From positions 186,001 through 250,000 of IMG/VR virus record IMGVR_UViG_3300042350_004528: DNA of 64,000 nucleotides. One strand, 5' to 3'. Shown piece after piece: positions 1-16,113 of the stretch. How positions within the stretch are numbered: the stretch's first letter is position 1; each line of letters starts with the position of its first letter. The position numbers and the translations under genes were made by a program. Below the pieces are notes generated by a model. The model was not told where the DNA came from and did not search any database. It was given only the letters and a program-made list of their open reading frames with translations.

Positions 1-313
1 AGTACTCACACGATAGGTCGCTTTTCTTTGCTACGATAGAGCCGTTAAAGCCGTCATTTACGGGCGTAAACCAATTTTCTTTGGCTACGAAGTCAGCCTC
101 TTTACCCTCACGAATACGGGCGTTATTCACCATATTTTGATAGTTAGCGTTTAACAACATATTGTAGTCAACTAACTTGGTGATAACGGCACTACGCAAA
201 GGGTTGCCCGTCTTTAACATTTTTTGTTCAACCACTGCTAATACTTGGGCGAACTTTGCACTGCCTCCGTCATTGATAAGGCTTGCGATTACTTGTGATT
301 TTTTGTTTTGCAT
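1..313 (-). CDS. Hypothetical protein (3'-truncated by window), paralogue of 10169..10684
   Basis: Manual translation MQNKKSQVIASLINDGGSAKFAQVLAVVEQKMLKTGNPLRSAVITKLVDYNMLLNANYQNMVNNARIREGKEADFVAKENW..; array promoter upstream; absent from ORF track. Confidence 0.88.
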   Translation of the reverse strand, partial: MQNKKSQVIASLINDGGSAKFAQVLAVVEQKMLKTGNPLRSAVITKLVDYNMLLNANYQNMVNNARIREGKEADFVAKENWFTPVNDGFNGSIVAKKSDLSCEY

Positions 314-399
314 ATCTGTTTGTTTTGATTTGATGATACAAATGTAGGTGTAATTTTTTTAACCCGCAAATTTTAACGCAAATTTTTTTATCTTTTTTT

Positions 400-498
400 T
401 TGTTTAACTTTTCGGGCAAAACATTAAACACAAAAAGTATCGTGTAGGTTGGAGTATACTCTCCCGACTTGTTCAGCCCGCCCGTTGTCTTTAACAAC
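400..498 (-). ncRNA. Putative structured small RNA 1 (three-way junction)
   Basis: Array promoter at 503-534 with no ATG-initiated ORF; stem CGGGCGGGC/GUUUUGCCCG enclosing GGAG-AGUAUA-CUCC and ACAC..GUGU hairpins. Confidence 0.55.
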
Positions 499-502
499 AA
501 TA

Positions 503-534
503 CAAAGGTAAATGAAATAAATTTAACTTGCAAA
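503..534 (-). promoter_or_regulatory. Array promoter (representative copy)
   Basis: TTTG(534-531)-20 nt-TACCTTTG(510-503). Confidence 0.85.
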
Positions 535-691
535 CTTTAACACAAATTTCTTTGTTTTTTTTTTGACTCATTTTAAGCCGTTTTAAGACACTCTAACAAC
601 TAAACCATACGAACATATACCTTTGTTCCTTTCGTTTAATCTGAGCATAAAAAAAGGGGCGATTTGCCCCTTTCTTTGTTTCTTGTTTACC

Positions 692-925
692 TTACCAAAC
701 CAAAACCGCTGGGTCTTCCGTTTGGGCGATTTGTTCCGCCTTTGTTTTTAACTCGGTCATTTGAGCGATTAAAACCTCATAGGTCGGTCTTTGATTTGTT
801 TTGTAACCCAAAATTCGTTTGGCACAATCCCTCGCTGAAATTCGGCTCATTTTCATTCCTGTTTTTTTCTCGAACTCTAAGCCGCGAAGGCATACTACGA
901 TTTGAAAAAGTGATGTTGTTGTCAT
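692..925 (-). CDS. Hypothetical protein, 77 aa
   Basis: Start corrected to MTTT after promoter and A-rich leader; terminator ~650-672. Confidence 0.8.
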   Translation of the reverse strand: MTTTSLFQIVVCLRGLEFEKKTGMKMSRISARDCAKRILGYKTNQRPTYEVLIAQMTELKTKAEQIAQTEDPAVLVW

Positions 926-989
926 TGTTTGTTTGTTTTGATAGTTCAAAGATAAACGAAATAAATTTAACTTGCAAATTTTAACATAA

Positions 990-1016
990 AAAAAAGGGGA
1001 ATTTCTTCCCCTTTCT
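990..1016 (-). terminator. Intrinsic terminator GGGGAA-GAAA-TTCCCC + U tract (similar copies ~1240, 2801, 6661, 17538; + strand ~25958)
   Basis: GC stem, GAAA tetraloop, flanking A/T tracts. Confidence 0.85.
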
Positions 1017-1032
1017 TTGTTTCTTGTTTACC

Positions 1033-1173
1033 TTAAAAATTTCTTCCCGAAATTTTATATTTGTCTTCTTTTGGATTACCCCAAAACCAATTGTTAAGTT
1101 TACGAACTATAACTATTGATAGCCAAATGGTAAGAAAAAATATGGGCAATCCGATAATAAAGAAATCTTTCAT
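1033..1173 (-). CDS. Small membrane protein, 46 aa
   Basis: MKDFFIIGLPIFFLTIWLSIVIV TM segment; own promoter and terminator. Confidence 0.75.
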   Translation of the reverse strand: MKDFFIIGLPIFFLTIWLSIVIVRKLNNWFWGNPKEDKYKISGRNF

Positions 1174-1282
1174 AGGTTTGTTTGTTTTGTTGATATAAAG
1201 ATAAGTTAAATTTATTTCATTTGCAAGTTTTAACATAAAAAAAGGGGAATTTCTTCCCCTTTGTTTGCATTAGCACTTTTGT

Positions 1283-1348
1283 TTACATTAGCACAGCCAT
1301 GATTAACAAAGCACCGCAAAAAAGCGTTAAGACGAATAGAATACTCAT
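1283..1348 (-). CDS. 21-aa hydrophobic peptide MSILFVLTLFCGALLIMAVLM
   Basis: Only ORF between an array promoter (1371-1401) and a terminator (~1240-1262). Confidence 0.62.
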   Translation of the reverse strand: MSILFVLTLFCGALLIMAVLM

Positions 1349-1465
1349 TGTTTATTTTGATTTGTTGATACAAAGATAAGTTAAATTTATTTCATTTGCA
1401 AGTTTTAACATAAAAAAAAGGGAACTTTTTTTGTTCCCTCTCTTTTGATCCACAACCCTATTCTT

Positions 1466-2017
1466 TTAATATGAACAACCTTTTGATTTAACAAAGGGAA
1501 TAAAAACCCCGAAGTTTGCACTAACTTGTTTTTGTGTGTTTATATCAACCCTAACCCAACCAACATAATAGTTAAGATACAAACCCCCAACCAAAGTGTT
1601 TATGTTTTTGCGACAACTTAAAACGCTGAACTCCCCGACACTTGTTTTTGTGTAGTTTGTGTATGTTTCTCTTTGATTAAAGTTTAACCCTGCGTGAACC
1701 CCAACCCGAACTGCGTTATCATTGTTCAACACTTTACCAACCAACAACTTTGTGTTTGTTTCTTTTGTTGATATGTTTCTAACCTCGTAATTGTTGTATT
1801 GTGGGTGTTGTTCGGGTGCAACATAATCATATTGAAACAAAGGTGCTTGTTCCCCTTGTTTAATACAACCATAAGAAACTGAACCATAGTAACCCCAATT
1901 GTTTGCGTCAACCCCCAGGGTTATATCGTTTAACTTTGTGTTTGTTCCTACCAACATTTGTCCGTTTGCAACCATTGAAGAAACTCCGAGTGCGATTGAG
2001 AAAATTAACTTTTTCAT
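1466..2017 (-). CDS. Secreted, putative outer-membrane beta-barrel-like protein, 183 aa
   Basis: Signal peptide MKKLIFSIALGVSSMVANG; alternating hydrophobic/aromatic strands. Confidence 0.65.
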   Translation of the reverse strand: MKKLIFSIALGVSSMVANGQMLVGTNTKLNDITLGVDANNWGYYGSVSYGCIKQGEQAPLFQYDYVAPEQHPQYNNYEVRNISTKETNTKLLVGKVLNNDNAVRVGVHAGLNFNQRETYTNYTKTSVGEFSVLSCRKNINTLVGGLYLNYYVGWVRVDINTQKQVSANFGVFIPFVKSKGCSY

Positions 2018-2119
2018 TTGTTTTGTTTGATTTGATAACACAAAGATATGTTAAATTTATTTCATTTGCAAATTTTAACATAAAAAAAGGGGACTTTTTT
2101 GTCCCCCTTTTTTGTTCGG

Positions 2120-2185
2120 TTAATCTAACTTGTTGCTGACAAACGAACCGATAGCAACAAGAATTAAAGCTATTAATAGTCCCAT
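2120..2185 (-). CDS. 21-aa hydrophobic peptide MGLLIALILVAIGSFVSNKLD
   Basis: Between gene 2192..2404 and its terminator; manual translation. Confidence 0.55.
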   Translation of the reverse strand: MGLLIALILVAIGSFVSNKLD

Positions 2186-2191
2186 AGTTTT

Positions 2192-2404
2192 TTATATGTT
2201 ATTTGTTTGACAAAACCTATCAAAATAGGCTTCTTCTTGGGCTTGAACATAACGAGATTCATCCGTTATTGTTTCACTTGGGGAATAACTTGGGTGGTAC
2301 GCTAATTTACGATTTACATCATAAACAATTGTGTCCCCCTTTTGTAGTCTTTTACCACTTGCGGCACATTTGCTACTGAATTTGGCTACGATTATTTTTA
2401 ACAT
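2192..2404 (-). CDS. Hypothetical protein, 70 aa
   Basis: Start corrected to MLKII. Confidence 0.8.
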   Translation of the reverse strand: MLKIIVAKFSSKCAASGKRLQKGDTIVYDVNRKLAYHPSYSPSETITDESRYVQAQEEAYFDRFCQTNNI

Positions 2405-2518
2405 TGTTTGTTTGTTTTGATAGTTCAAAGATAAACGAAATAAATTTAACTTGCAAATTTTAACATAAAAAAAGGGTAAATTTCTTTACCCCCTTTTCAA
2501 ACATTATGAACAACAAAT

Positions 2519-2746
2519 TTATTTTATCTTTTCCGCGAAATAGTTTACAACATCGGGAATGTGTTTTTTGTAGTACGGCTGATTTTCCATGCACCACTTT
2601 TTAACCTCTTCTTTTGTTGTGAAACCTTTGTTACCCCAACTTGAAGCGTTTGATTGAATTTGATTGAATGTTGGCTCCAAGTCGTTGATGAAGTCGCGAA
2701 CTGTCCAACCCTCCCAAATGTGTTTGTCTAAATTTACTTTTGCCAT
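2519..2746 (-). CDS. Hypothetical protein, 75 aa
   Basis: Start corrected to MAKVN. Confidence 0.82.
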   Translation of the reverse strand: MAKVNLDKHIWEGWTVRDFINDLEPTFNQIQSNASSWGNKGFTTKEEVKKWCMENQPYYKKHIPDVVNYFAEKIK

Positions 2747-2830
2747 TGTTTGTTTGATTTGTTGATGCAAAGATAAATGAAATAAATTTAACTTGCAAAT
2801 AAAAAGGGGAATTTCTTCCCCTTTCTTTTT

Positions 2831-3019
2831 TTAGTTATAAGCATCGCAAGTGTGGTGCTTGTGTCTTTCAGGTTTAATCGGTGCATAGTGTGTTTTGTAC
2901 GCATCGCACTGAACATACTTTGTGCGTTTTTTATGTTTCTTTAACTTGATACCATCGTTTGCAAAACTTGTTCCCGTTGCCATAACTGAAACCAACAATA
3001 AAATAAATAACTTTTTCAT
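2831..3019 (-). CDS. Small secreted basic protein with two CDAY motifs, 62 aa
   Basis: Signal peptide ending TSFA; QCDAYK and TCDAYN. Confidence 0.75.
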   Translation of the reverse strand: MKKLFILLLVSVMATGTSFANDGIKLKKHKKRTKYVQCDAYKTHYAPIKPERHKHHTCDAYN

Positions 3020-3132
3020 AGGGTTTGTTTTTGATTATGATGTAAAAGTATATAGATTAAATTTAATGTGCAAATTTTTTGCAAAAAAAAAGGAAGAAAT
3101 TTCTTTCTTCCAATTTTCGTATCAAATCAAAC

Positions 3133-3510
3133 TTAATCTTTCGTTACTTGCATTGTCTTTTCAAGCAACAATATTCGTGGTACAATGTACTCAACATATT
3201 CGGGTGTAAGTTGTTTGTTGTATATCTCCATAACAAAATCAACCGAAGGTGTTGCACCATAGAATGTTCCCAGCAAAACATTTGTTTCTTTGTGTCTTAT
3301 CTCGGTGTAACTTTCCTTTGTGGTTTTCGCCACTTTAATATCAAAGACACAACAAAATTCGGGGTCGGACTGCAAAGCGTTTAGTTTGGCTATATCCGTT
3401 TCGTTTGTGTAGTGAACCTCCAAAACAAGTTTGGGCTCTTTCGGGTTTGTACTCGCTTTAACTCCAACAAAGGTAGTTAAGCAAATGAGTGTTAAAAGTA
3501 TTTGTTTCAT
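3133..3510 (-). CDS. Secreted hypothetical protein, 125 aa
   Basis: Signal peptide ending VKA; ATG 4 nt after -7 box. Confidence 0.8.
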   Translation of the reverse strand: MKQILLTLICLTTFVGVKASTNPKEPKLVLEVHYTNETDIAKLNALQSDPEFCCVFDIKVAKTTKESYTEIRHKETNVLLGTFYGATPSVDFVMEIYNKQLTPEYVEYIVPRILLLEKTMQVTKD

Positions 3511-3546
3511 ACTACAAATATAAACATTTTATTTTTAATATGCAAA

Positions 3547-3699
3547 TTAAACTCTCCCCTCAATGATTGCCGCGAACCAAAGTGATGCGTAAAGAAACGC
3601 AGACATAAAAATCATAAAGGCGACTGAACCATAAAACTCTTTCGGATCTTCCTTGCGAAAATCATTCAGCGTGATGAACATTTCTTTAATATCTTTCAT
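3547..3699 (-). CDS. Small membrane protein, 50 aa
   Basis: Manual translation MKDIKEMF..YGSVAFMIFMSAFLYASLWFAAIIEGRV; own promoter. Confidence 0.72.
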   Translation of the reverse strand: MKDIKEMFITLNDFRKEDPKEFYGSVAFMIFMSAFLYASLWFAAIIEGRV

Positions 3700-3761
3700 T
3701 GTTTGTTTGTTTTTGTTGATACAAAGATAAGTGAAATAAATTTAACTTGCAAATTTTAATT

Positions 3762-3922
3762 CAAAAAAAGGGGAAATTTCTTTCCCCAATTAAATGCATT
3801 TTGCCTTTTTCTGTTTATTGACGGATTACAAAAGACAAACGTCATCCGTTCTCACCCACCTTATAAATCCTTCCCGTGCACGAAACAAGAAACTGGGGCG
3901 GGATTGTTTCTACTTGTTATTT
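3762..3922 (-). ncRNA. Putative small RNA 3 (~160 nt)
   Basis: Array promoter 3927-3958 and terminator ~3762-3790 bracket a GC-richer segment with no ORF at a normal start position; helices AAUCC/GGAUU and ACGGAU/AUCCGU. Confidence 0.5.
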
Positions 3923-3962
3923 AATACAAAGATAAACGAAATAAATTTAATGTGCAAATTTT

Positions 3963-4160
3963 TTACCAAGTGAAATCATTTTTATTCGCATTCAAAGAAA
4001 GGAATAAAATGAATAGAAACAATAAACCTGTTCCGAAGAAGAATGCAAACTCTTCGTTCTTGATGTAACCCTTTGATTGCAGGGCAAGTCCAACGCTTAC
4101 TCCAATGGTTATCAAACCAAGGATTGAAAGCACGAATGGGATAACTTTAACTTTTTTCAT
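3963..4160 (-). CDS. Two-TM membrane protein, 65 aa
   Basis: Start corrected to MKKVK; two hydrophobic helices. Confidence 0.78.
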   Translation of the reverse strand: MKKVKVIPFVLSILGLITIGVSVGLALQSKGYIKNEEFAFFFGTGLLFLFILFLSLNANKNDFTW

Positions 4161-4200
4161 ATTTTTTTGTTTTGATAGTTCAAAGATAAACGAAATAAAT

Positions 4201-4344
4201 TTAACTTGCAAACTTTTGTTTAAGTTTTTTTCGGTTATATGTTTTACCCGAAGGTTTGCTCCTTGTTATCATATTCCTACGAATGATTTGAGCAATGTGT
4301 CTTTCTGACAAACCTTGTTTCCAATCTTGTGTTTCGTTTTTCAT
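4201..4344 (-). CDS. Small basic protein, 47 aa
   Basis: Manual translation MKNETQDW..KLKQKFAS; stop lies inside the next promoter. Confidence 0.68.
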   Translation of the reverse strand: MKNETQDWKQGLSERHIAQIIRRNMITRSKPSGKTYNRKKLKQKFAS

Positions 4345-4382
4345 AACACAAAGATAAATGAAATAAATTTAATGTGCAAATT

Positions 4383-4724
4383 TTATTCTGCAAAATTATC
4401 TTTACCACATTCAGGACAAACTTTTTCCTCATACAAAGTATGGTCTTGTGGATTATGTTCGTTGTCAACCATTACCGATTTCAACTCATCCTTACCACCA
4501 ATCCAACCACAATTTTCGCAATAAAGGTCGTATTCAATTTCAATAACCTCATCAAAAATTTCCTTGTATTCAGTAACCAATTCTTTATCGGTGAAATTCG
4601 CATACCCTTTCATCCCGTATTCAAATATACTGGCAACATAACTATTGTCACCTCGTTCGTGTTCCGATATGATTGTGTTGATGTCGTTATCTACCAACTT
4701 GTCTATGATTTCCTGTCTTTTCAT
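4383..4724 (-). CDS. Hypothetical protein with C-terminal Zn ribbon, 113 aa
   Basis: CENC..CPEC. Confidence 0.8.
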   Translation of the reverse strand: MKRQEIIDKLVDNDINTIISEHERGDNSYVASIFEYGMKGYANFTDKELVTEYKEIFDEVIEIEYDLYCENCGWIGGKDELKSVMVDNEHNPQDHTLYEEKVCPECGKDNFAE

Positions 4725-4751
4725 AACTTAAAAGTTTTTCTTATATTGTAC

Positions 4752-4802
4752 TCATCGCCAACCTTGTTTAACTATTACGTTCTTTCTACCTTGCTTTCGC
4801 CA
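4752..4802 (-). pseudogene. Start-less remnant of the 3' end of a paralogue of 16275..16508
   Basis: WRKQGRKNVIVKQGWR* versus WIKQGKKNVIIKQGWQ*. Confidence 0.7.
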
Positions 4803-4806
4803 TATT

Positions 4807-4917
4807 TTAGTTATATCGTTGTTTACAAATCACCCAAATGCTATAAAGAATAAGTGGTGAAAAAAGAATTAATTGCCCCAAACAAACCATTCTTTGTCTT
4901 GCTGTTAATCTTTTCAT
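4807..4917 (-). CDS. 36-aa membrane peptide
   Basis: MKRLTARQRMVCLGQLILFSPLILYSIWVICKQRYN; ATG 4 nt after variant -7 box TATCTTTA. Confidence 0.6.
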   Translation of the reverse strand: MKRLTARQRMVCLGQLILFSPLILYSIWVICKQRYN

Positions 4918-4941
4918 AGTTTAAAGATAAGTTAAATAAAT

Positions 4942-5106
4942 TTAACTTGCAAACTTTGTTTCAATTTTTTTATCCCCAACAAAGTTATACCCAGAGTTAA
5001 ACCACCATAGGGCCAAACGGATTGACCAGTAAATGCTTCGTTTTTGTTTCCTTCCATTCAGATAGCATTCCCACGCTTTCCGAATTCTAAACTTGTTTAT
5101 TCGCAT
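4942..5106 (-). CDS. Hypothetical protein, 54 aa
   Basis: Manual translation MRINKF..ETKFAS; overlaps stop of upstream gene. Confidence 0.6.
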   Translation of the reverse strand: MRINKFRIRKAWECYLNGRKQKRSIYWSIRLALWWFNSGYNFVGDKKIETKFAS

Positions 5107-5315
5107 AATTCAACCTCAATGATTTCACAATAGTTTTCCAACTCGTCTAACGGAATTCTACCATAGTTCGTTGATGAATAGTAACCTTGAAACTCGTAAC
5201 GCTTCTTCCATTCAGTTAAGGCGTTCTTTGCTTCCTCAACACTATTGTAAGTGTCGCTGAAATGAATGCTAAACCCATCGGGACTTAACACATCGTATTG
5301 CTTGTTTGATTTCAT
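5097..5315 (-). CDS. Hypothetical protein, 72 aa
   Basis: ORF with array promoter. Confidence 0.82.
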   Translation of the reverse strand: MKSNKQYDVLSPDGFSIHFSDTYNSVEEAKNALTEWKKRYEFQGYYSSTNYGRIPLDELENYCEIIEVELCE

Positions 5316-5418
5316 AGTTCAAAGATAAGTGAAATAAATTTAACTTGCAAATTTTAATACAAAAAAAAGGGGCAGATTTCTCCGCCCACCTTTTTCAAAT
5401 ATGAAAACAAATCAAGTT

Positions 5419-5793
5419 CTATGAAAAGTAAGGTTGTATAACCTCTTTGTCGCTCAAATTAGCTCTCATCTTTGCATACGCTTCCGCTTCTTTATCATCT
5501 TTGTTATAGATGAAATCAACATTGCTTGAAGCGATTGCAAATTGTCCGTTCGCAATACCCCAAAAGTAATAACGAACATTGTCATTCACATCAACTGCAT
5601 TCAATGCCCTCTCGCAAACCTCGTTCAGTTCGGGGAATAACTTAACGCTTCCCGTGATACTTGAAACGATTGCAAGTTTCATACTGCCGTTGGCGAATTC
5701 ATCAGCTACCTTGTTCTCACCAATGTTTCTTAAACCCTCAATAAGGATTTGTTTGTAGCTACCCGAAGGTGCTTTTGGAAATGGATTGTTCAT
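5419..5793 (-). CDS. Hypothetical protein, 124 aa
   Basis: ORF, promoter, terminator. Confidence 0.85.
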   Translation of the reverse strand: MNNPFPKAPSGSYKQILIEGLRNIGENKVADEFANGSMKLAIVSSITGSVKLFPELNEVCERALNAVDVNDNVRYYFWGIANGQFAIASSNVDFIYNKDDKEAEAYAKMRANLSDKEVIQPYFS

Positions 5794-5835
5794 ATCGTTT
5801 TGTTTTTTGATACAGCAAAGATAAGTGTAATAAAT

Positions 5836-6006
5836 TTAACTCGCAAGTATTTTTTTAATTTCTTTTAATCGATCCAAAACTTTATCCATTTCTTTTGAAA
5901 TCTTTGTGTGGGTTCTATGTTTGCTATTAGGTTCCCACAACTCGGACAAAGTTTTATATCGTTCTTTGAGCCGTATCTCCTCAACAATCAATACCGAATG
6001 TTCCAT
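5836..6006 (-). CDS. Hypothetical protein, 56 aa
   Basis: Start corrected to MEHS; ends ILAS inside next promoter. Confidence 0.72.
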   Translation of the reverse strand: MEHSVLIVEEIRLKERYKTLSELWEPNSKHRTHTKISKEMDKVLDRLKEIKKILAS

Positions 6007-6008
6007 TG

Positions 6009-6212
6009 TTAATTCAGTATTGATTGGTAAGGGATTGGAAATTCCAAGAAAGGTGCGGACAACCATTTGTCAATTTTGATTGTCTTGTCGGTAATCTTTT
6101 CCTTTCGGTAAACCTTTACGCAAGTTTCCAAGTTTTCATCAGCGAATATGGTTTCGGTGCTTTCATCATCATTTGTGCGAAATACCTCGTACCAAGTTTT
6201 TGTGTTTTCCAT
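6009..6212 (-). CDS. Hypothetical protein, 67 aa
   Basis: ORF with array promoter. Confidence 0.78.
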   Translation of the reverse strand: MENTKTWYEVFRTNDDESTETIFADENLETCVKVYRKEKITDKTIKIDKWLSAPFLEFPIPYQSILN

Positions 6213-6285
6213 TTTTTCTTTTTCCTAATTTTGTGAGTGCAAAGGTATATATAATAAATTTAACTCACAAGTTTTCAACACATTT

Positions 6286-6606
6286 TTACCAAGTTTTTGG
6301 ATATTTGTCCAATGTTTCTTGCGGATATAAAACTTCGTTTCCGTTGTTCAAAACATCTTCCCACCAACGAATACCAATCTGCAATCGTGGTACTGCGAAC
6401 TTCATAACATCTTCATCGTGGACACGAAAGAACAAATCGTTTCTTCCACCTGTTCCCTCTTCGCCAGGTGTTGGCAAAGTTAAAACTTCTTCGCAATAAA
6501 CTCCGCGAACATTAAACTCTTCTTTGAGCCAATTTTCAAAATCTTTGGCACAACTCTTTCCAACAATTGTTCCGTGCCAAACACATACTTGATTAAAATT
6601 TTCCAT
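6286..6606 (-). CDS. Hypothetical protein, 106 aa
   Basis: Start corrected to MENFN; GGRNDLFF motif. Confidence 0.85.
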   Translation of the reverse strand: MENFNQVCVWHGTIVGKSCAKDFENWLKEEFNVRGVYCEEVLTLPTPGEEGTGGRNDLFFRVHDEDVMKFAVPRLQIGIRWWEDVLNNGNEVLYPQETLDKYPKTW

Positions 6607-6694
6607 TTGTTTTGTTTTTGATATAACAAAAATAAATGAAATAAATTTAATGTGCAAATAAAAAGGGGAATTTCTTCCCCTTTCTTATCCACAA

Positions 6695-7099
6695 TTAGCG
6701 GTCAAAATATGTTTCTTTGATACCTTGTTTCTTTTCCATTGACTGCGACATAAGGTACATTGTTTCCCCCATTGGTTTATCGTGGTGAGAAATAACAACT
6801 TCAATGATACCCTTGTTGTCGGTCGGGTGAAACAACATTGTAAACTCCCCAGTGTTCGGTGCAAGTTTACGGATTAAAGTTTCTGCACTATCCGTTTCAA
6901 ATTCGGTGTACCCTGCAACATTTCTCCAAGTCAAAGAAAGTCCGTAACAAAAGAATTTCTTTGTACGCATTTTCTTCATCATTGTTTTTACTTCGTACAC
7001 AAAATCTTCCCAATAGATTTGTGCTTCCATTTCATCTTCAACTTCGGGCATATCCCAACCCGCTAAAATTCTTTTTGTTTCTTTGATTAAAGTTTCCAT
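6695..7099 (-). CDS. Hypothetical protein, 134 aa
   Basis: Start corrected to METLI; SHHDKPMGE motif. Confidence 0.85.
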   Translation of the reverse strand: METLIKETKRILAGWDMPEVEDEMEAQIYWEDFVYEVKTMMKKMRTKKFFCYGLSLTWRNVAGYTEFETDSAETLIRKLAPNTGEFTMLFHPTDNKGIIEVVISHHDKPMGETMYLMSQSMEKKQGIKETYFDR

Positions 7100-7210
7100 T
7101 TGCTTGTTTGTTTTTGTTGATACAAATATAAATGAAATAAATTTAACTTGCAAATTTTAACACAAAAAAAAAGGGCGGATTTCTCCACCCCTTTTTTCAA
7201 TCGGAAAGAA

Positions 7211-7567
7211 TTAAAGTTTATAGAATGTTATGACACACTTATTTTTTTTGTTGTCAATATCGGGTGCTGAACTATTATATTTACTACCCTTTGGTTGCCA
7301 CCTTTCATAATAATAGTTTATGTAGTTTTTAACCAACTCAATATCACTTTCTGCCAAATGCTTTGTGAATGTAGCAACTAATGTTCCGTTACTTGCGTTC
7401 CTTGAAATTGTCATTTCTTCGGAAATGTTTGTTGGCAAAGTAAGTTTGTTTTGTGCTAACTTTGAGCAAGTTTCAAGGGTGTCAACAACATCAACCTTGT
7501 TGGTTGTTTGTGCTTTTGCGGTTGTTACTCCGAACAACACAACTGCGATAAAGAATACTTTTTTCAT
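7211..7567 (-). CDS. Secreted hypothetical protein, 118 aa
   Basis: Signal peptide ending AKA-Q (Bacteroidota Q rule). Confidence 0.82.
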   Translation of the reverse strand: MKKVFFIAVVLFGVTTAKAQTTNKVDVVDTLETCSKLAQNKLTLPTNISEEMTISRNASNGTLVATFTKHLAESDIELVKNYINYYYERWQPKGSKYNSSAPDIDNKKNKCVITFYKL

Positions 7568-7629
7568 CTTGTTTATTTTTGATTATGATACAAAGATAAA
7601 TGAAATAAATTTAACTTGCAAATTTTACC

Positions 7630-7905
7630 TCAAAAATCTTCGGTTGAAAAATCAATGTTAAGTTCGCTAACCATTTGTATTGTTTCAAACTCCGTTTTAA
7701 GTTCATTAACTTCTTCGTTGATAAGACACATCTCAAAGTCCAGTGCGTGTACTTTCATAAGACAAAGAATAGGGTGTATGTGCCCGTTCTCCAACTTAAA
7801 CATCAATGTTGTTTTCTCACCCAAAATTTCTGTTGCTCGGTCATTAAACTTAACCAACTTACTCTTTAGCTCCATTAAACGAATGTCCGTTTGCTTGATT
7901 GCCAT
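7630..7905 (-). CDS. Hypothetical protein, 91 aa
   Basis: Start corrected to MAIKQ. Confidence 0.8.
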   Translation of the reverse strand: MAIKQTDIRLMELKSKLVKFNDRATEILGEKTTLMFKLENGHIHPILCLMKVHALDFEMCLINEEVNELKTEFETIQMVSELNIDFSTEDF

Positions 7906-8045
7906 TTTGTTTGTTTTTGTTGATACAAAGATAAATGAAATAAATTTAACTTGCAAATTTCAGGGATCTAAGTTATCCACATTGTTATAAACAAAAAAGG
8001 GTGGGGATTTCCCCCACCCAATCATCAAATAAACAAACAAGCAAT

Positions 8046-8285
8046 TTAACAAATCAATGATACTTCCATACTTTGAAGTTTTTTGATAAACTTCTCTTCA
8101 TCGGTATCAACCATAAGTTTAATTGTTGGATTGATACTTTGGGCATAACCCCATTTTTGTTTTACCGCCTCAAAGTAATTTCTTGCGGTTTTCAGTTGCA
8201 AAAAGTTGTTACAACTGCTCAACACTTTGAATGCCCTTTCTCGGTCATCGTGGTAATCTTTTGCGAAGTCGGTTACTTTTAACAT
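8046..8285 (-). CDS. Hypothetical protein, 79 aa
   Basis: Start corrected to MLKV. Confidence 0.8.
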   Translation of the reverse strand: MLKVTDFAKDYHDDRERAFKVLSSCNNFLQLKTARNYFEAVKQKWGYAQSINPTIKLMVDTDEEKFIKKLQSMEVSLIC

Positions 8286-8342
8286 ATTTGTTTGTTTTTG
8301 TTGATACAAAGATATGTGTAATAAATTTAACTCGCAAGTTTT

Positions 8343-8693
8343 TTAGTTAAATTGTGCAGCCCATCGGTCGCAAGTGGCTTTGTCCACCCAAATAACCATT
8401 GCTTCCAATTCTTCTTTTGTTGTGATTGGCTCGGTGCTTTCGCCATCATCATCAGTACCTTGTAAGATAGCGTTTCCTACAATAGGGTATTGCCAGTCCG
8501 CCATCATAAACCCACCATCAAACGGATGATACAACCCCTCATCATCGGTGTAGATTGTGTCGTTGTTCTCGAATGTTACAGGACAAGCGAAGGTTTCGCA
8601 ACCATTACCAATAGCAGGTGCAATGTCTTTCCAATCGTTGATTTCAATTTCTTCGATTTTGCGGTCAGCGGTGTTAATCTTAAATGCTTTCAT
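8343..8693 (-). CDS. DUF3846-like protein
   Basis: DDEGL..PIVGNAIL pattern. Confidence 0.65.
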   Translation of the reverse strand: MKAFKINTADRKIEEIEINDWKDIAPAIGNGCETFACPVTFENNDTIYTDDEGLYHPFDGGFMMADWQYPIVGNAILQGTDDDGESTEPITTKEELEAMVIWVDKATCDRWAAQFN

Positions 8694-8729
8694 ATCGTTT
8701 CGTTTTGTTGATACAAAGATAAATGTAAT

Positions 8730-8960
8730 TTATTTAACCTGCAAATTTTCATTCAATTTATTTGCAAAGTTTTCAGCACTTTGTTTATCGTGAAACCAAT
8801 AGTTAGCCAAGTCCTTACCTCTATAAGGTTTTAAGGTTTTGTGGCTTACCACTTGCCCTCGTTCGTTGGTAACATAATAGTATGTCGCACACATAGGCAT
8901 ACCACTCGGTGTGCTTTTACCCTTACGGGGTATGTATTGATTTGATTGTACTTGAAACAT
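8730..8960 (-). CDS. Hypothetical protein, 76 aa
   Basis: Leaderless-type start. Confidence 0.78.
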   Translation of the reverse strand: MFQVQSNQYIPRKGKSTPSGMPMCATYYYVTNERGQVVSHKTLKPYRGKDLANYWFHDKQSAENFANKLNENLQVK

Positions 8961-8984
8961 AATGCAAATATAAGTATAATAAAT

Positions 8985-9200
8985 TTAACTCGCAAATGGT
9001 TTCCAACTTAATGGTTCATCGGTTGAAAGGTCGCAAGCAATTTCAATGTTGTTTAAGTGTGTCCAACACTCGTCAGCCATTCCCGTTGGTTGCTCAAATT
9101 GTTTTGCCAACCCGTTCTCATAGATAAACTTTCGGATAACATCCAAGTCATCTTTAACCATTGCAAGGCGGTGCTTTAATTGATCGATTTCGTTTTCCAT
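8985..9200 (-). CDS. Hypothetical protein, 71 aa
   Basis: Leaderless-type start; ends PFAS. Confidence 0.78.
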   Translation of the reverse strand: MENEIDQLKHRLAMVKDDLDVIRKFIYENGLAKQFEQPTGMADECWTHLNNIEIACDLSTDEPLSWKPFAS

Positions 9201-9236
9201 ATCACAAAGATAAACGAAATAAATTTAATGTGCAAA

Positions 9237-9536
9237 TTAATCAACAACTCCGTTCCCGTAGTAAAGGTCAAACGATTTCTTTTTATAGTCATCGGACTTT
9301 AACCACGCTTGGTACTTTTGTTCCCACTCGTTGTCTTGAAACTTGTAATAACTCCCGTTGCAATATCTTAAACGATTATTCAGTTTATAGAATTGTTCAA
9401 ACAAACCTATCTCGGTTATGTCCGCAATTTCCTTTGTACTGGTGATAACCGATGTCTTATCAAGGTAACAAAAACCCGTTTCGGTTACAACCGTTTCGTT
9501 TCTTGGGTTCCAATAGTTCAATGTCGCTTTGTGCAT
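9237..9536 (-). CDS. Hypothetical protein, 99 aa
   Basis: ORF with array promoter. Confidence 0.82.
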   Translation of the reverse strand: MHKATLNYWNPRNETVVTETGFCYLDKTSVITSTKEIADITEIGLFEQFYKLNNRLRYCNGSYYKFQDNEWEQKYQAWLKSDDYKKKSFDLYYGNGVVD

Positions 9537-9589
9537 ATCGTTTGATTTCTTGATACAAAGATAAGTGTAGTTTTTTTAACTTGCAAATT

Positions 9590-9907
9590 TTATTTCAAAA
9601 TAATACCATCAACAATCAACACTCGGTCATACTTTAAAATCTTAATATCAGCCAATAGTTTAGTTGTTTTACGAAGATACTCCGCTTCAGTCATATTAGA
9701 ATACTCCAATTCATTTTCAATCTTACTTAACTTATTTTGACTTCTTTCGGCTTTTTTAACCATTTCGTGGTAAAGTTCGGAAAGGGTTTCCTTTGTGTCG
9801 CTTGGACTACCTGCGATAATATCTGTTTGTTGGTGGCGAACGCTTGAATAGTCGGTGTCATAAACTCCAACGCAGGTGTAGTCTGTTTTTAATCCGATTA
9901 ATAACAT
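9590..9907 (-). CDS. Hypothetical protein, 105 aa
   Basis: Start corrected to MLLIG. Confidence 0.8.
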   Translation of the reverse strand: MLLIGLKTDYTCVGVYDTDYSSVRHQQTDIIAGSPSDTKETLSELYHEMVKKAERSQNKLSKIENELEYSNMTEAEYLRKTTKLLADIKILKYDRVLIVDGIILK

Positions 9908-10038
9908 ATTGTTTGTTTGTTTTGTTGATACAAAGATAAACAAAATAAATTTAACTTGCAAACTTTATCACAAAAAAAAGATAAAAAAAACTTACATTAA
10001 AGTTTGCACATTAAAAAAAATACATTTACCTTTGTATT

Positions 10039-10150
10039 GTCCAATTAAGGAAGGGCGGGCACTCAAAAGGTGGCTGGGGTGTTCTAAGGGAACCTGCCCT
10101 TTACTCTCGTATTATGTTAAATAAAAAAAAAGGGGATTGCTCCCCTTTTC
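10039..10150 (+). ncRNA. Putative structured small RNA 2 (three-way junction)
   Basis: The only + array promoter in the - block (TTTG 10003, TACCTTTG 10027-10034); stem AAGGGCGGG(10051-59)/CCUGCCCUU(10093-101); internal GCACUC/GGGUGU and GUUC/GAAC hairpins; ends at bidirectional terminator ~10127-10150. Confidence 0.65.
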
Positions 10151-10168
10151 TTGTTTCGGCTTTCTCGC

Positions 10169-10684
10169 TTACTTGAAAGCGATTACATTCTTGTTGGCTC
10201 TCACTTCCTTAATGCCCTCAATCTTGATTGTGCGGAAGATTACTTCATCTGCAACACCTTGATTTGCGGCACTTGAAACTCGCTTAAAGTTCTTGATGAT
10301 TTCCACTTCTTCTGCGGTGGCTTCTTTGCCATCAACAAAGTATTGCAACACTTCTGCACTTTCAACAATGCCCGACAAATACATTTTGTCTTGTGCTTTC
10401 TTGCTTCTTACGATTGCACCATTCTTGCTATCGTAAACTTTCTCGTGCCAATTACTTTTGGCTTGAAAATCGGCTTCTTTGCCCTCACGAACACGCTGAT
10501 TGTTTACTGCATTTTGGTACACAGCATTAAGCAAAAACTTGTAGTTTACAAGTTTGGTAACATTCGCCTTACGCAAAGGATTACCTGTTTTTACCATGTC
10601 TTGTTCAACATTGGCAATGATTGTTGCGAAGGTGGCACTTCCGCCATCGTTAATCGCATTGAAGATGATTTGTTCTTTGTTCAT
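10169..10684 (-). CDS. Hypothetical protein, 171 aa, paralogue of 1..313
   Basis: Shared INDGGSA, KTGNPLR, TKLVxY, REGKEADFxAKxNW. Confidence 0.88.
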   Translation of the reverse strand: MNKEQIIFNAINDGGSATFATIIANVEQDMVKTGNPLRKANVTKLVNYKFLLNAVYQNAVNNQRVREGKEADFQAKSNWHEKVYDSKNGAIVRSKKAQDKMYLSGIVESAEVLQYFVDGKEATAEEVEIIKNFKRVSSAANQGVADEVIFRTIKIEGIKEVRANKNVIAFK

Positions 10685-10760
10685 ATTGTATCGTTTTTTG
10701 ATGATGCAAATATAAGTGCAATAAATTTAACTTGCAAATTTTACTGCAAAAAAATTAAAA

Positions 10761-11078
10761 TTATTCTTCAAGCAATTCCGTAACCTCAAATTCCTTTTCC
10801 TCAATCATCTTCAACAAACAAATAAGTTGGTCGGTTGAAAGGTCTTGCAAAGAAATGGTGTCCATATCGTGTCCACTATCAATAAACACTCGTTCATCAA
10901 GTGTAACCCCACCAATAACCTCGTTCATTTGGTCATCAATGTAGTTAAAGATAATACCACCATGCAGGTTTATCTCTTGTGCGTTGTTGCATATCATTTC
11001 GGTCTTAATATCCTCAATGATTTCCTTTCGTTGCAATTCAATGCGAAGATTGTGTCGGTATGATTTATCTTTGTTCAT
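10761..11078 (-). CDS. Hypothetical protein, 105 aa
   Basis: ORF between identical promoter copies. Confidence 0.82.
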   Translation of the reverse strand: MNKDKSYRHNLRIELQRKEIIEDIKTEMICNNAQEINLHGGIIFNYIDDQMNEVIGGVTLDERVFIDSGHDMDTISLQDLSTDQLICLLKMIEEKEFEVTELLEE

Positions 11079-11129
11079 AGGTTTGTTTTTGATGATGCAA
11101 ATATAAGTGCAATAAATTTAACTCGCAAG

Positions 11130-11369
11130 TTAAACTTCGATTTCACCACTTTTTATTTTCTCGTCAATCAGTTGTTCATACTCGGTTTGTATTTCCTTTG
11201 AACACTGGCTAACTTGGATCGCGACAAACTCACCATGAGGTAAACCCTCAAGTGCGTCATCAACGCTTCCCGCAAAAAACAATTTGTTATCGGACTTCCA
11301 ACGCAAGGGTTGGTCTGTTCCTCTTTCAAACACCAAATAGGTGTTTTCCTTTTTGTATATGTTGTTCAT
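11130..11369 (-). CDS. Hypothetical protein, 79 aa
   Basis: ORF track. Confidence 0.75.
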   Translation of the reverse strand: MNNIYKKENTYLVFERGTDQPLRWKSDNKLFFAGSVDDALEGLPHGEFVAIQVSQCSKEIQTEYEQLIDEKIKSGEIEV

Positions 11370-11547
11370 ACGCTTGGCGTTCTTCTTTGATTTTTATGAG
11401 AGTATTCAACTTGTTCTTTGCACATTCAATCGCTTCTTTCTTCGCACCCTTGTATTCAATAACCCACATTAAGTTTGCTTCTTCTTGGTGAAAGTTATTT
11501 GAACTCAAATTTCGCAACCAATAGTCATAGTTTGAATACATACTCAT
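11326..11547 (-). CDS. Hypothetical protein, 73 aa
   Basis: ORF track. Confidence 0.7.
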   Translation of the reverse strand: MSMYSNYDYWLRNLSSNNFHQEEANLMWVIEYKGAKKEAIECAKNKLNTLIKIKEERQAYEQHIQKGKHLFGV

Positions 11548-11551
11548 AGCG

Positions 11552-11668
11552 TTATAGTTTAGTTAATATACGAAAGATAAGGGCAATAAAATGTAGTGTT
11601 ATTACCAACACTCCAAATATCACAACAAAGTAATAAAAGTAATCGTGTGCTGTCCTTTTCAATTTCAT
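11552..11668 (-). CDS. 38-aa membrane peptide
   Basis: MKLKRTAHDYFYYFVVIFGVLVITLHFIALIFRILTKL; ATG 4 nt after -7 box. Confidence 0.65.
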   Translation of the reverse strand: MKLKRTAHDYFYYFVVIFGVLVITLHFIALIFRILTKL

Positions 11669-11705
11669 AATACAAAGATAAGTGAATTAAATTTAATGTG
11701 CAAAT

Positions 11706-11954
11706 TTACAAGTGAGTAACATGCCCACAATTTAAGCATTCAATATAAGGTTTTCCACCTTGTGCAACAATAACACTTTCTTTGGGAAACAACCACCATT
11801 CATTCTCGCCACATTGTTCACATTCTGCATTCTCACTCCCCATTCTCTCGGTCATTGTCATTTGTCCCTTTCCTTTCAAATGTGGGTACACCAGGTCAAG
11901 TACATTTCCATTCACTTCTTGAAGGACTGCTTGATAAAATTTCGGTTTGCTCAT
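11706..11954 (-). CDS. Zn-ribbon protein, 82 aa
   Basis: CEQC..CLNC. Confidence 0.8.
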   Translation of the reverse strand: MSKPKFYQAVLQEVNGNVLDLVYPHLKGKGQMTMTERMGSENAECEQCGENEWWLFPKESVIVAQGGKPYIECLNCGHVTHL

Positions 11955-12054
11955 ACTCGTTTTGTTTTTGATAGTTCAAAGATAAGTGAATTAAATTTAA
12001 TATGCAAATAAAAAGGGGACTTTCGCCCCCTTTTTTTACCCACAGTTTTATGGT

Positions 12055-12711
12055 TTAATCATCACTATCACTATACTCGTAAACCTCACAATCAACATAC
12101 AACTTCACATACAACTTGCCCTCTTGTTCAACAACCTCTAAACCATTCTCGCCCTCATCTTCTGCCGTATTGTAGTTTACGCTATCATCAGTAATTTCGC
12201 CCTTGTGTTCGGGTGTCCAATCGTTTGCACAATCTTGGAAACTTTCGTGCAACTGCTCAATCATTTGTTCGTTTTCTTCGGTAAGAATGAAATCCTTTTT
12301 GTAGTCAGTATTCTTTCCGTTCCAATTAGTGTGCGACATACCACCAATGTATTCAGTTAGAAAGTCGGCTTGTTCCTTTGTAACCTCACAAAGTACATTA
12401 CCACTATACCTTTCGCACCACTCCGATTGAGCCGATTTTGAGTAAGTGAAATCATCTTCTTCATCACTCAATTCAATACGGACAATACCACTTTCGCCCA
12501 TATAGTGTCCGTCAGACGCTTCATAAAACTGAACTTGGTTGTAAACCTCATTGTCAAAGTAGTCAGTTAAACCACTTTCATCATTCACAATCTCGCCCTT
12601 TTTATCGTGGAACAAAAGGTTTGTGTCATTCATACTATCGCCACCACAACTGAAATGAAATTCAGCGAAAGCGATTTTTTGGGCTTTCCATTTTTCAATA
12701 ATTTCTTGCAT
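12055..12711 (-). CDS. DUF6878-like acidic protein, 218 aa
   Basis: FSCGGDS motif; adjacent to DUF6915-like gene. Confidence 0.6.
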   Translation of the reverse strand: MQEIIEKWKAQKIAFAEFHFSCGGDSMNDTNLLFHDKKGEIVNDESGLTDYFDNEVYNQVQFYEASDGHYMGESGIVRIELSDEEDDFTYSKSAQSEWCERYSGNVLCEVTKEQADFLTEYIGGMSHTNWNGKNTDYKKDFILTEENEQMIEQLHESFQDCANDWTPEHKGEITDDSVNYNTAEDEGENGLEVVEQEGKLYVKLYVDCEVYEYSDSDD

Positions 12712-12754
12712 ATCGTTTTTGTTTTTGATTGGTACAAAGATAAATGAAATAAAT

Positions 12755-13171
12755 TTAACTTGCAAGTTCTTCGTTCTCTTTTCTTAATTTATCCAAGAAA
12801 ACATTTGCAGTTTCAATACTTTCGGGGTTGTCCACCAACTTAACCCCATTGTGTATCCAATCGGGCAAATCAAAGTGTTTAAGATAGTCCTGTGCAGTCG
12901 GCACAAACTTCATACGGAAATCTTCCAAGATATGCAACATAGCAATATCAATCGTGTCTACACTTCTACCACTTGAATTGGTTATATTGTAACCAAACAC
13001 CTTTGGAATGATTGTGTAAGCAAACCAAGTATTGTGTGTTAATACCCTTGCTGAATTGTTGTTCATAGTCGCTTTCGGACTATCAATAAGTTCGTGGATA
13101 GCCAAGTAATCTTCCACTTTACCACCCCAACGCTTAACGCTGGACTTTGAATGAATTAACGGATTAGCCAT
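12755..13171 (-). CDS. DUF6915-like protein
   Basis: MANPLIHSKSSVKRWGGKVEDYLAIH..HILED. Confidence 0.72.
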   Translation of the reverse strand: MANPLIHSKSSVKRWGGKVEDYLAIHELIDSPKATMNNNSARVLTHNTWFAYTIIPKVFGYNITNSSGRSVDTIDIAMLHILEDFRMKFVPTAQDYLKHFDLPDWIHNGVKLVDNPESIETANVFLDKLRKENEELAS

Positions 13172-13294
13172 ATTGTTTTGTTTTTTGATATTGCAAATGT
13201 AAGTGTAATAAATTTAACTCGCAAATTTTAACACAAAAAAAGGGGGAAATTTCTTTCCACCCTCTTTTCTTTATCAAATAAACAAACAAAATCC

Positions 13295-13564
13295 TCAATC
13301 CCAAATTCGTGTAACTTGTTGGCTGAATGGGTTGTACTCAACTTGTTTACCCATTTTCCAATCCCCTTTGTCCACTAACAAGGTTTTGTGTTCGTTACTC
13401 CACGCACCATTCGGTTTTTCGTGTTTCAGTTCACTATCCTCTTTGACAAGGACTTCGGGGAAATCGGTTTTCTCTTGCAAGTCCATAGCGAAATTGCCAT
13501 AGAGTGTGTGTTGGTTTGTTCCCTCGCCCACCAACAAAGTGTGCTTTGTTAAACTCTTTTTCAT
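13295..13564 (-). CDS. Small His-containing protein of the type that partners DUF6745-like proteins, 89 aa
   Basis: GEGTNQH..LKHE..EH..QVEYNP..RIWD. Confidence 0.65.
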   Translation of the reverse strand: MKKSLTKHTLLVGEGTNQHTLYGNFAMDLQEKTDFPEVLVKEDSELKHEKPNGAWSNEHKTLLVDKGDWKMGKQVEYNPFSQQVTRIWD

Positions 13565-13626
13565 ATCATTTATGTTTTTGATTGGTACAAAGATAAGTAT
13601 AATTTTTTTAATGTGCAAGTATTTTT

Positions 13627-14304: not shown

Positions 14305-14452
14305 ATTGTTTCGTTTTTGATAGTGCAAATGTAAGTGTAATAAATTTAACTTGCAAGTATTCACAAAAAATAATTTGAAATACTTTTCTTTTCTCTGGCA
14401 ATCAAGTTAAAAAGAAAAAGGGGACTTTCGCCCCCTTATCTTGTTCATACTT

Positions 14453-15280: not shown

Positions 15281-15452
15281 AAAGAATTATTTTTTGTTTT
15301 TGATTGGTGCAAATATGAGTGTAATTTTTTTAACTCGCAAATTTTATCACAAAAAAATTTAAAAAACTTTTCAAACCTGGTGGATCCATAAAAAGAAAGG
15401 GGCAATGTTTCCACCGCCCCCTATTGTTGTAATCAAAAAACGCAACAATATA

Positions 15453-16058: not shown

Positions 16059-16113
16059 ATCTGTTTTGATTTATGAATACAAAGGTAAGTGTAATTTTTT
16101 TAATGTGCAAATT

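What the first reader, a model, noticed from the sequence alone, without database searches (positions are those of the whole stretch)
1..10684. Two paralogous unknown proteins each paired with a related structured ncRNA (candidate RNA-protein system)
Seen: ORFs 1..313 and 10169..10684 are clear paralogues (INDGGSA, KTGNPLR, REGKEADF). Each is adjacent to an ORF-less cassette, 400-498 (-) and 10039-10150 (+). Both cassettes have the same -7 context TACCTTTG-TATTGT and a GGGCGGGC...UGCCC closing stem holding two internal hairpins with different sequences. The second RNA has the only + promoter in an 18-kb - block and converges on the protein gene at a shared terminator. Inference: a conserved protein + ~100-nt RNA module with a constant scaffold and variable interior, such as a guide, decoy or antitoxin-like RNP. 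I recognise no family for the protein.
Basis: partly seen in the sequence, partly recalled or inferred. Interest (0 to 1): 0.82.

Follow-up and report, generated by a model that had tools for sequence, protein, structure and literature searches.

The report
Multi-copy small RNA genes in lake phages

Summary
The two ORFs are paralogues (65% identity, E 4e-41). Each has an ORF-less cassette beside it with the same promoter context. The octamer GGGCGGGC occurs only at these two places in 64 kb.

The window is part of a ~300-kb freshwater phage with Bacteroidota-type promoters. A covariance model built only from RNAs of other phages finds both cassettes, and nothing else credible, in the window.

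The family has 41 distinct members. Its core is about 60 nt, starts right after a -33/-7 promoter, and has three tandem hairpins:
- P1.
- P2, where all six pairs covary.
- P3, GGAG-GUAUA-CUCC.

Rfam 15 has no match. The protein family (about 1,500 clusters) matches no Pfam, NCBIfam, PHROG, PADLOC or PDB entry.

The pairing is enriched but not obligatory:
- Of 47 RNA copies, 10 adjoin this protein family, 13 adjoin DUF932, 5 GP88 and 4 SprT-like genes.
- About a third of copies face away from both neighbours.
- About half of the protein lineages have no RNA within 4-5 kb.

Best reading: stand-alone, trans-acting small RNA genes of the phage early region, function unknown. The RNP idea remains a minority possibility. 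No usable transcript data were found.

The parts
1..313 (-). Paralogue A, the N-terminal 104 codons. The gene runs off the left end of the window. It belongs to the uncharacterised 'INDGGSA' phage protein family.
   Evidence: The full 167-173 aa copy is seen in L044/L017. A family HMM hits it at 2e-57.
339..375 (-). Paralogue A's own Bacteroidota-type promoter (TTTG ... TACATTTG), lying between RNA1 and the gene.
   Evidence: Sequence; pattern scan (site ending at 339).
400..500 (-). RNA1, a small RNA gene. The covariance-model core is 439-497. P1 is 484-498, P2 466-478 and P3 451-464. The 3' extension 400-438 holds a weak hairpin and U-rich stretches, with no strong terminator.
   Evidence: R1 (built without it) scores 20.6 bits, E about 3e-5. 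R2 scores 42.6 bits, but R2's seed contains RNA1. Alignment; fold.
503..535 (-). RNA1 promoter. The -7 box TACCTTTG is at 503-510, with TTTG about 20 nt upstream.
10005..10034 (+). RNA2 promoter (TTTG ... TACCTTTG at 10027-10034). It is the only convincing + strand promoter in the 18-kb minus-strand block.
10037..10102 (+). RNA2 core, a divergent family member. P1 is about 10040-10051. P2 is 10057-10075 with loop UCAAAAG. The usual P3 is replaced by a different hairpin at about 10076-10094. The family's tail AACCUGCCCUUU is kept.
   Evidence: R1 scores 12.8 bits, E about 0.03. R2, with filters off on the whole window and not trained on RNA2, scores 17.1 bits, E 0.0025. The cassette is 98.6% identical between lineages whose neighbouring CDS is 89.5% identical.
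10125..10152 (.). Bidirectional intrinsic terminator shared by RNA2 (+) and paralogue B (-).
   Evidence: found on both strands; sequence.
10169..10684 (-). Paralogue B, 171 aa, pI 9.3. It has a confident alpha/beta model with no known structural relative.
   Evidence: (pLDDT 88, pTM 0.82).
10707..10745 (-). Promoter of paralogue B.
   Evidence: site ending at 10707; sequence.

Best explanation
Both cassettes are independent small-RNA genes of one multi-copy family. The family is carried by large freshwater phages that use Bacteroidota-type promoters.

Shown:
- Each copy starts a few bases after a host-type -33/-7 promoter.
- The core is about 60 nt and folds into three consecutive hairpins: P1, J1/2 GGGA, P2, P3 and a tail (N)ACCUNCC.
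- Most copies end at a U-run or a terminator.
- Copies sit in the early, one-gene-one-promoter region in any orientation.

Inferred:
- The RNA is made early by the host polymerase.
- It acts in trans as a stable structured RNA.
- Its near-invariant junction and P3 nucleotides are a docking site for a protein or RNA partner, so it works as a decoy or scaffold and not as a programmable guide.

Its frequent place beside the INDGGSA paralogues and DUF932 reflects membership of the same early-gene module. A direct physical partnership with the paralogue protein is possible but is not required by the data.
For: Family membership without circularity: model R1 was built from 10 RNAs of other phages. 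It finds RNA1 and RNA2, and only them, in the window. R2 with filters off gives the same result.

Structure: on 41 distinct sequences, 90% of cells are paired. All 6 P2 pairs change on both sides. There are 66 double-change cells against 22.5 +/- 3.6 in shuffles, and at most 17 in slid controls. The covariation score is 0.311 against 0.117. P2 lay in the unconstrained N-gap of the search patterns, so this signal is not ascertainment.

Promoter: all 42 distinct copies have an nAnnTTTG box at a fixed short distance upstream; 32 of 42 also fit a strict -33/-7 pattern. A U-run lies within 40 nt in 25 of 42. RNA2 has a strong terminator.

Selection: the RNA2 cassette is 98.6% identical where the adjacent CDS is 89.5% and other neighbours are 48-79%.

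Independence from neighbours: about a third of copies are antisense to both flanking genes, and neighbour families are diverse. There are several copies per genome, at least 5 on one 135-kb contig.

Not coding: copies have no start codon, and copy lengths differ by non-multiples of three.
Against: - No transcript was seen. RNA-labelled runs hold only a few low-depth contigs of nearby coding DNA and none over RNA2.
- P3 shows no covariation because its 3' strand is invariant. The invariance of P1 and P3 is partly built in, because the retrieval patterns demanded those sequences.
- RNA1 has no clear terminator and could read into paralogue A.
- Within this window both copies flank the two paralogues. 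With about 100 intergenic slots that would be rare by chance (roughly 1e-3, my estimate).
- Ten of 47 copies adjoin a family that makes up 1-2% of genes, so some functional link to the protein is not excluded.
- The trans-acting decoy or scaffold mechanism is inference only.
Confidence: 0.55

Rival explanations
1. Dedicated RNA-protein module. The INDGGSA-family protein binds the neighbouring RNA and works with it as an RNP: a guide, decoy or antitoxin-like pair.
For: - Both copies in this window flank the two paralogues.
- Adjacency within 200 nt recurs in diverged lineages: L034, L042 on both sides, L045/46, L047, L052 on both sides, L123.
- All three type-2 lineages adjoin a family member.
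- The protein is mildly basic, pI 9.3.
- It has a confident fold of unknown function.
Against: - 37 of 47 RNA copies adjoin other genes.
- Loci L056/L064, L057 and L069 carry 1-3 RNAs and no family member in 5-14 kb.
- About half of the protein lineages lack the RNA within 4-5 kb: L005/L007, L030, L032/L121, L048, L051, L053-55, L122, L124.
- RNA subtype, side and strand vary within one protein clade, so there is no sign of co-evolution.
- The protein family is far wider than the RNA: 1,523 clusters at 50% identity.
- No RNA-binding domain was detected.
Confidence: 0.2
2. Cis-acting, promoter-proximal RNA element. The nascent hairpins would modify the transcribing polymerase (processive antitermination, as with the put RNAs of phage HK022). 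Alternatively they would act as an attenuator or insulator for the local transcription unit.
For: - Every copy begins within a few bases of its promoter.
- Hairpins are followed by U-runs and then genes on the same strand in roughly half of the copies.
- The region is densely punctuated by terminators: 36 against 7.7 expected.
- If RNA2 were read through, it would run antisense into paralogue B.
Against: - Downstream genes have their own promoters.
- About a third of copies point away from or against both neighbours.
- Nothing here tests antitermination.
Confidence: 0.12
3. A DNA-level element, such as a mobile promoter cassette, a recombination or replication signal, or a binding-site cluster. 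Any transcript would be incidental.
For: - Cassettes differ in place and orientation between related phages.
- One lineage shows a local inversion of the 3' flank.
- Promoter repeats do recombine: a contig in run X16 joins 10694 to 11086.
Against: - Compensatory changes keep P2 paired on one strand, downstream of a promoter.
- The cassette is conserved from promoter to terminator as one unit.
Confidence: 0.06

Closest known systems
Orphan structured-RNA motifs of phages and metagenomes (Rfam 'motif' families; the catalogues in PMC2864571 and PMC10690425)
   Same: It is a short intergenic RNA defined by comparative covariation, phage-borne, known mainly from environmental contigs, and of unknown function.
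   Different: No Rfam 15 family matches, even at permissive E-values. I could not check whether it is one of the roughly 8,500 unnamed IMG/VR candidates of PMC10690425, because no supplement is held.
UG27 reverse-transcriptase ncRNA arrays of Bacteroidota/Bacillota phages (bioRxiv 10.64898/2026.09.22.753630)
   Same: Both are multi-copy, structurally conserved and sequence-diverse ncRNA units in phages of Bacteroidota. Both lie next to accessory proteins with no recognisable domain. Units are gained and lost between relatives.
   Different: UG27 units are 135-167 nt, single long interrupted hairpins in tandem arrays beside a 380-450-aa RT. Here the core is about 60 nt with three hairpins, copies are dispersed, and each has its own promoter. 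No ORF longer than 236 aa lies in window 1-13.6 kb, and no RT is among the neighbours.
put RNAs of phage HK022 (from my own knowledge, not tested)
   Same: Two or more hairpins lie directly downstream of early promoters, with more than one copy per phage genome.
   Different: put elements lie in the leaders of long operons and act in cis. Here many copies are isolated or antisense to their neighbours.
Type III toxin-antitoxin antitoxin RNAs (ToxI and relatives; from my own knowledge)
   Same: A small RNA lies next to a protein gene of about 170 aa, with a terminator between them in some arrangements.
   Different: There are no tandem repeats. The protein has no PADLOC or Pfam ToxN-like match and no structural match in the PDB. 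The RNA often lies downstream of, or antisense to, the gene.

Membership tests
Any Rfam 15 RNA family | Score at or above the family's gathering threshold. | tested here: not met
   Only tRNA-Met at 52066-52139 passes in the window. Permissive scans of both cassettes and of five related loci give only chance-level hits far below threshold.
tRNA / tmRNA | Cloverleaf or tmRNA architecture recognised by ARAGORN. | tested here: not met
   ARAGORN finds only tRNA-Met at 52065-52139. The 5' end forms its own hairpin, not an acceptor stem.
Type III toxin-antitoxin (ToxIN-like) | Tandem direct repeats of the antitoxin RNA immediately upstream of the toxin gene. | tested here: not met
   No tandem array lies at 400-500 or 10037-10150. 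Each site holds a single copy.
Type III toxin-antitoxin (ToxIN-like) | Toxin protein of the ToxN/CptN/TenpN endoribonuclease families. | tested here: not met
   No Pfam, NCBIfam or PADLOC hit. There is no PDB fold match: best E 0.15, TM below 0.22.
UG27 RT-ncRNA system | A reverse transcriptase (PF00078, 380-450 aa) co-located with the RNA array. | tested here: not met
   The largest ORF in window 1-13.6 kb is 236 aa. Neighbour families are DUF932, GP88, SprT-like and PcfJ-like, with no RT.
UG27 RT-ncRNA system | ncRNA units of about 135-167 nt, one long interrupted hairpin each, in tandem arrays. | tested here: not met
   The core is about 60 nt with three short hairpins. Copies are dispersed and each has its own promoter.
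put-like processive antiterminator RNA | Acts in cis on the polymerase that made it, giving readthrough of downstream terminators. | not testable with these tools
   Only position can be assessed. All copies are promoter-proximal, but about a third have no co-oriented downstream gene.
Protein family 'INDGGSA' (unnamed) | Full-length similarity, with the conserved NDGG, GNPL, LNxxYxNxVN, REGKExDF, NW, DxxNG and NQG motifs. | tested here: met
   98 homologues lie at E from 1e-100 to 1e-29. The profile search gives 1,523 clusters at E <= 1e-3. Both window genes hit the family HMM.
New three-hairpin phage RNA family (models R1/R2) | A promoter-proximal core with P1, a covarying P2, P3 (GGAG-GUAUA-CUCC) and the tail ACCUNCC. 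| tested here: met
   RNA1 meets all features. RNA2 meets P1, P2 and the tail but has a different third hairpin. It scores 17.1 bits, E 0.0025, so its membership is that of a divergent subtype.

The most novel reading that the evidence does not exclude
The three-hairpin RNAs, the INDGGSA-family protein and perhaps the neighbouring DUF932 protein form a previously unknown early-expressed ribonucleoprotein system of large Bacteroidota phages. The several RNA isoforms, with their differing P2 hairpins, would give it different specificities, for example in host takeover or counter-defence.
Probability: 0.15. Interest if true: 0.8.

Novelty: new member of a known kind. Interest (0 to 1): 0.55.

Why it matters
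Large environmental phages are full of short genes and intergenic elements with no assigned role. This work defines a concrete RNA family with strong covariation. It gives the family's promoter, boundaries, copy number and preferred neighbourhood: INDGGSA-family, DUF932, GP88 and SprT-like early genes. It also provides a covariance model that can be run on complete genomes.

If the RNA proves to bind one of these widespread uncharacterised proteins, it would give a first functional handle on a protein family of about 1,500 clusters, and on DUF932. If not, it is still a new phage small RNA, made by the host polymerase early in infection, in a phylum whose RNA biology is poorly known.

Tried and rejected
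- Nucleotide search of the GenBank phage collection: no match.
- Protein libraries: Pfam, PHROGs, NCBIfam and PADLOC give nothing, apart from a chance-level PHROG hit.
- PDB by sequence: nanobody noise only.
- Foldseek against PDB: nothing, TM below 0.22.
- Foldseek against BFVD: only uncharacterised phage proteins.
- ESM Atlas: sub-threshold winged-helix leads at 0.79, treated as noise.
- Closing-stem fold: thermodynamic z-scores are weak. An all-against-all column scan of the alignment found no further helix. The 85/102 and 39/102 correlations look like subfamily coupling.
- Third candidate copy at 15427-15548: it lies inside a coding ORF, has no promoter, and scores E 0.35, so it was rejected.
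- Cellular genomes: the strict core pattern in 185,579 species gave 14 hits, none supported by the model.
- Target search: complements of the invariant P3/tail segment are not enriched in the window (11 against 6.6 +/- 2.5).
- RNA-seq: four RNA-labelled runs hold only sparse contigs of coding DNA.
- Literature: DUF932 has no described function in the held library. The bS21 huge-phage paper says nothing on non-coding elements.
Full report
**What the region is.** The window has no nucleotide match among GenBank phages. It is 100% identical in the tested genes to IMG/VR contigs, one of them 298,833 bp long, and it recurs in many lake-water metagenomes.
- From 1 to about 18.5 kb the minus strand carries about 38 matches to the Bacteroidota promoter pattern (TTTG, about 20 nt, TAnnTTTG). 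The plus-strand block starts near 18.5 kb.
- Terminator-like hairpins are about five times enriched: 36 against 7.7.
- The region is therefore a string of short one-gene units, typical of an early region.
- Elsewhere the window encodes NAPRTase, a phosphoribosyltransferase, adenylosuccinate synthetase, an RNA ligase, a tyrosinase-domain protein, an SPFH protein and a tRNA-Met.

**Checking the observation.** The two ORFs are paralogues (65% over 93 aa, E 4e-41). The cassettes contain no credible ORF.
- The 14-mer TACCTTTGTATTGT occurs only at these two sites.
- The octamer GGGCGGGC also occurs only at these two sites, against 0.18 expected.
- RNA2 and paralogue B converge on a bidirectional terminator at 10125-10152.
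- The closing-stem fold appears in single-sequence predictions, but its energies are unremarkable (z -2.0, -1.1, -0.3).

**Conservation.** In four contigs whose paralogue B is 91% identical, the stretch from the RNA2 promoter to its terminator is unchanged apart from one A in a run. Measured against L003:

| Segment | Identity |
|---|---|
| RNA2 cassette | 98.6% |
| Paralogue B CDS | 89.5% |
| Gene on one side | 79% |
| Gene on the other side (replaced) | 48% |

RNA2 is therefore the best-kept segment of the neighbourhood.

**A wider RNA family.**
- Flanks of more distant homologues (48-57% protein identity) hold similar promoter-driven non-coding units with the core ...GGAG-GUAUA-CUCC....
- Pattern scans of viral and metagenomic contigs added many more. 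These patterns left the middle of the RNA free.
- Model R1 was built from ten such RNAs, none from the window. It finds RNA1 (20.6 bits, E about 3e-5) and RNA2 (12.8 bits, E about 0.03) and nothing else in the window.
- Model R2, built from 46 sequences without RNA2 and run with filters off, again finds only these two (42.6 and 17.1 bits; E 0.0025 for RNA2). A third hit lies inside a coding ORF with no promoter and was rejected.

**Structure.** On 41 distinct sequences, 90% of cells are paired.
- All six P2 pairs change on both sides.
- There are 66 double-change cells against 22.5 +/- 3.6 in shuffles, and at most 17 when partners are slid.
- The covariation score is 0.311 against 0.117.
- P1 is GUC/GAC in most copies and a longer stem of different sequence in others, including RNA1.
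- P3 pairs in 88% of cells, but its 3' strand never varies, so it is uninformative.
- No further helix emerged from an all-column scan.

Two caveats apply. The alignment is fitted to the model. The sameness of P1 and P3 is partly built in by the retrieval patterns. P2 is free of that bias.

RNA2 keeps P1, P2 (loop UCAAAAG, like UCACAAG and UCCAAAG in others) and the tail AACCUGCCCUUU, but it has another hairpin in place of P3. Two further 'type 2' lineages share its AAGGGCGG segment. They are not detected by the models.

**Gene-like features.**
- All 42 distinct copies have an nAnnTTTG box at a fixed short distance upstream; 32 of the 42 also fit the strict -33/-7 pattern, so 10 are only near-matches to it.
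- 25 of 42 have a U-run within 40 nt of the core.
- Copies lack start codons and differ in length by non-multiples of three.
- Rfam 15 has no matching family, and ARAGORN sees nothing.
- A strict core pattern found no model-supported copy in 185,579 cellular species genomes.

**Is it paired with the protein?** Counting the nearest genes of 47 copies:

| Neighbour family | Copies |
|---|---|
| DUF932 / TIGR03299-like | 13 |
| INDGGSA family | 10 |
| GP88 | 5 |
| SprT-like | 4 |
| Assorted small genes | the rest |

- About a third of copies are antisense to both neighbours.
- One 135-kb contig has at least five copies, only two of them beside the protein.
- Loci L056/L064, L057 and L069 hold one to three RNAs and no family member in 5-14 kb.

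Starting from the protein gives a similar picture.
- An RNA lies within 200 nt in the two window lineages, L034, L042, the L037 type, L045/46, L047, L052 and L123.
- No RNA lies within 4-5 kb in L005/L007, L030, L032/L121, L048, L051, L053-55, L122 and L124.
- Within the paralogue-A clade the RNA is type 1 upstream (window, L034), type 2 upstream plus type 1 downstream (L042), or type 2 downstream and antisense (L037 type).

The association is therefore well above chance but neither obligatory nor co-evolving.

In this window the GP88-like, SprT-like and weak DUF932-like genes (28887-29720, 17973-18494, 25079-25933) have no RNA beside them. The cassettes seem to move among one recurring set of early genes.

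**The protein.**
- It has 98 close homologues, all 'hypothetical' apart from three loose regulator labels.
- A profile search gives 1,523 clusters at 50% identity.
- No Pfam, NCBIfam, PHROG or PADLOC family matches.
- The AlphaFold model is confident (pLDDT 88, pTM 0.82). It has no PDB relative and only uncharacterised phage relatives in BFVD.
- Its function remains unknown.

**Expression.** Four RNA-labelled runs hold only a few low-depth contigs of nearby coding DNA and none over RNA2. This neither supports nor refutes transcription.

**Comparison with known systems.**
- The nearest published analogue is the UG27 reverse-transcriptase ncRNA array of Bacteroidota phages. Its units are 135-167 nt long hairpins in tandem next to an RT, none of which applies here.
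- There are no tandem repeats or ToxN-like protein, so it is not a type III toxin-antitoxin.
- A put-like cis role cannot be tested. It fits the promoter-proximal position but not the isolated or antisense copies.

**Verdict.** This is a real, conserved and structured small-RNA gene family, new to Rfam, multi-copy in large freshwater Bacteroidota phages. It most likely acts in trans.
- The RNP mechanism is unproven, at about 0.15-0.2.

Noticed in passing
window 1-18500 (- strand) and 18500 onward (+ strand): About 38 Bacteroidota-type promoters (TTTG ... TAnnTTTG, embedded in a repeated AATAAATTTAACTTGCAAA-like cassette) drive single short genes, most with their own terminator. Divergent blocks meet near 18.5 kb.
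   Followed up: partly
window 10694-11086: A contig in RNA-labelled run X16 joins 10694 to 11086, skipping gene 10761..11078. The joint lies in a 38-nt repeat formed by two promoter cassettes. This looks like a strain variant made by recombination between promoter repeats.
   Followed up: no
window ~566-585 (- strand); also L005 ~6095-6115 and the flanks in L030 and L032: A conserved intergenic motif, CTTAAAACGGCTTAAAA (two CTTAAAA half-sites), lies next to INDGGSA-family genes in several lineages. Some of these lineages have no RNA cassette. It may be a protein-binding site.
   Followed up: partly
L044 4560-4900 (just left of the window's position 1); also L007 3600-3950, L030 and L032: A long C-rich non-coding stretch with repeated AAAAATTTCTGGGG-like units follows the last INDGGSA gene. 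It may be a genome end or a replication or packaging region.
   Followed up: no
window 40759-50808, 52065-52139, 62101-63483: Auxiliary genes: a tyrosinase-domain protein, adenylosuccinate synthetase, an SPFH/Band-7 protein, NAPRTase plus a phosphoribosyltransferase (NAD salvage), tRNA-Met, and an RNA ligase with an OB-fold domain.
   Followed up: partly
L042 3830-3880 against window 400-440: The type-2 RNA upstream of the L042 homologue is followed by the reverse complement of RNA1's 3' tail (GTTTAATGTTTTGCCCGAAAAGTTAAAC). This points to a local inversion or cassette exchange between lineages.
   Followed up: partly
L046/L052 downstream of DUF932 (e.g. L052 6293-7669): The RNA-bearing modules also carry a PcfJ-like protein. 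Together with DUF932, this recalls gene sets of conjugative elements.
   Followed up: no
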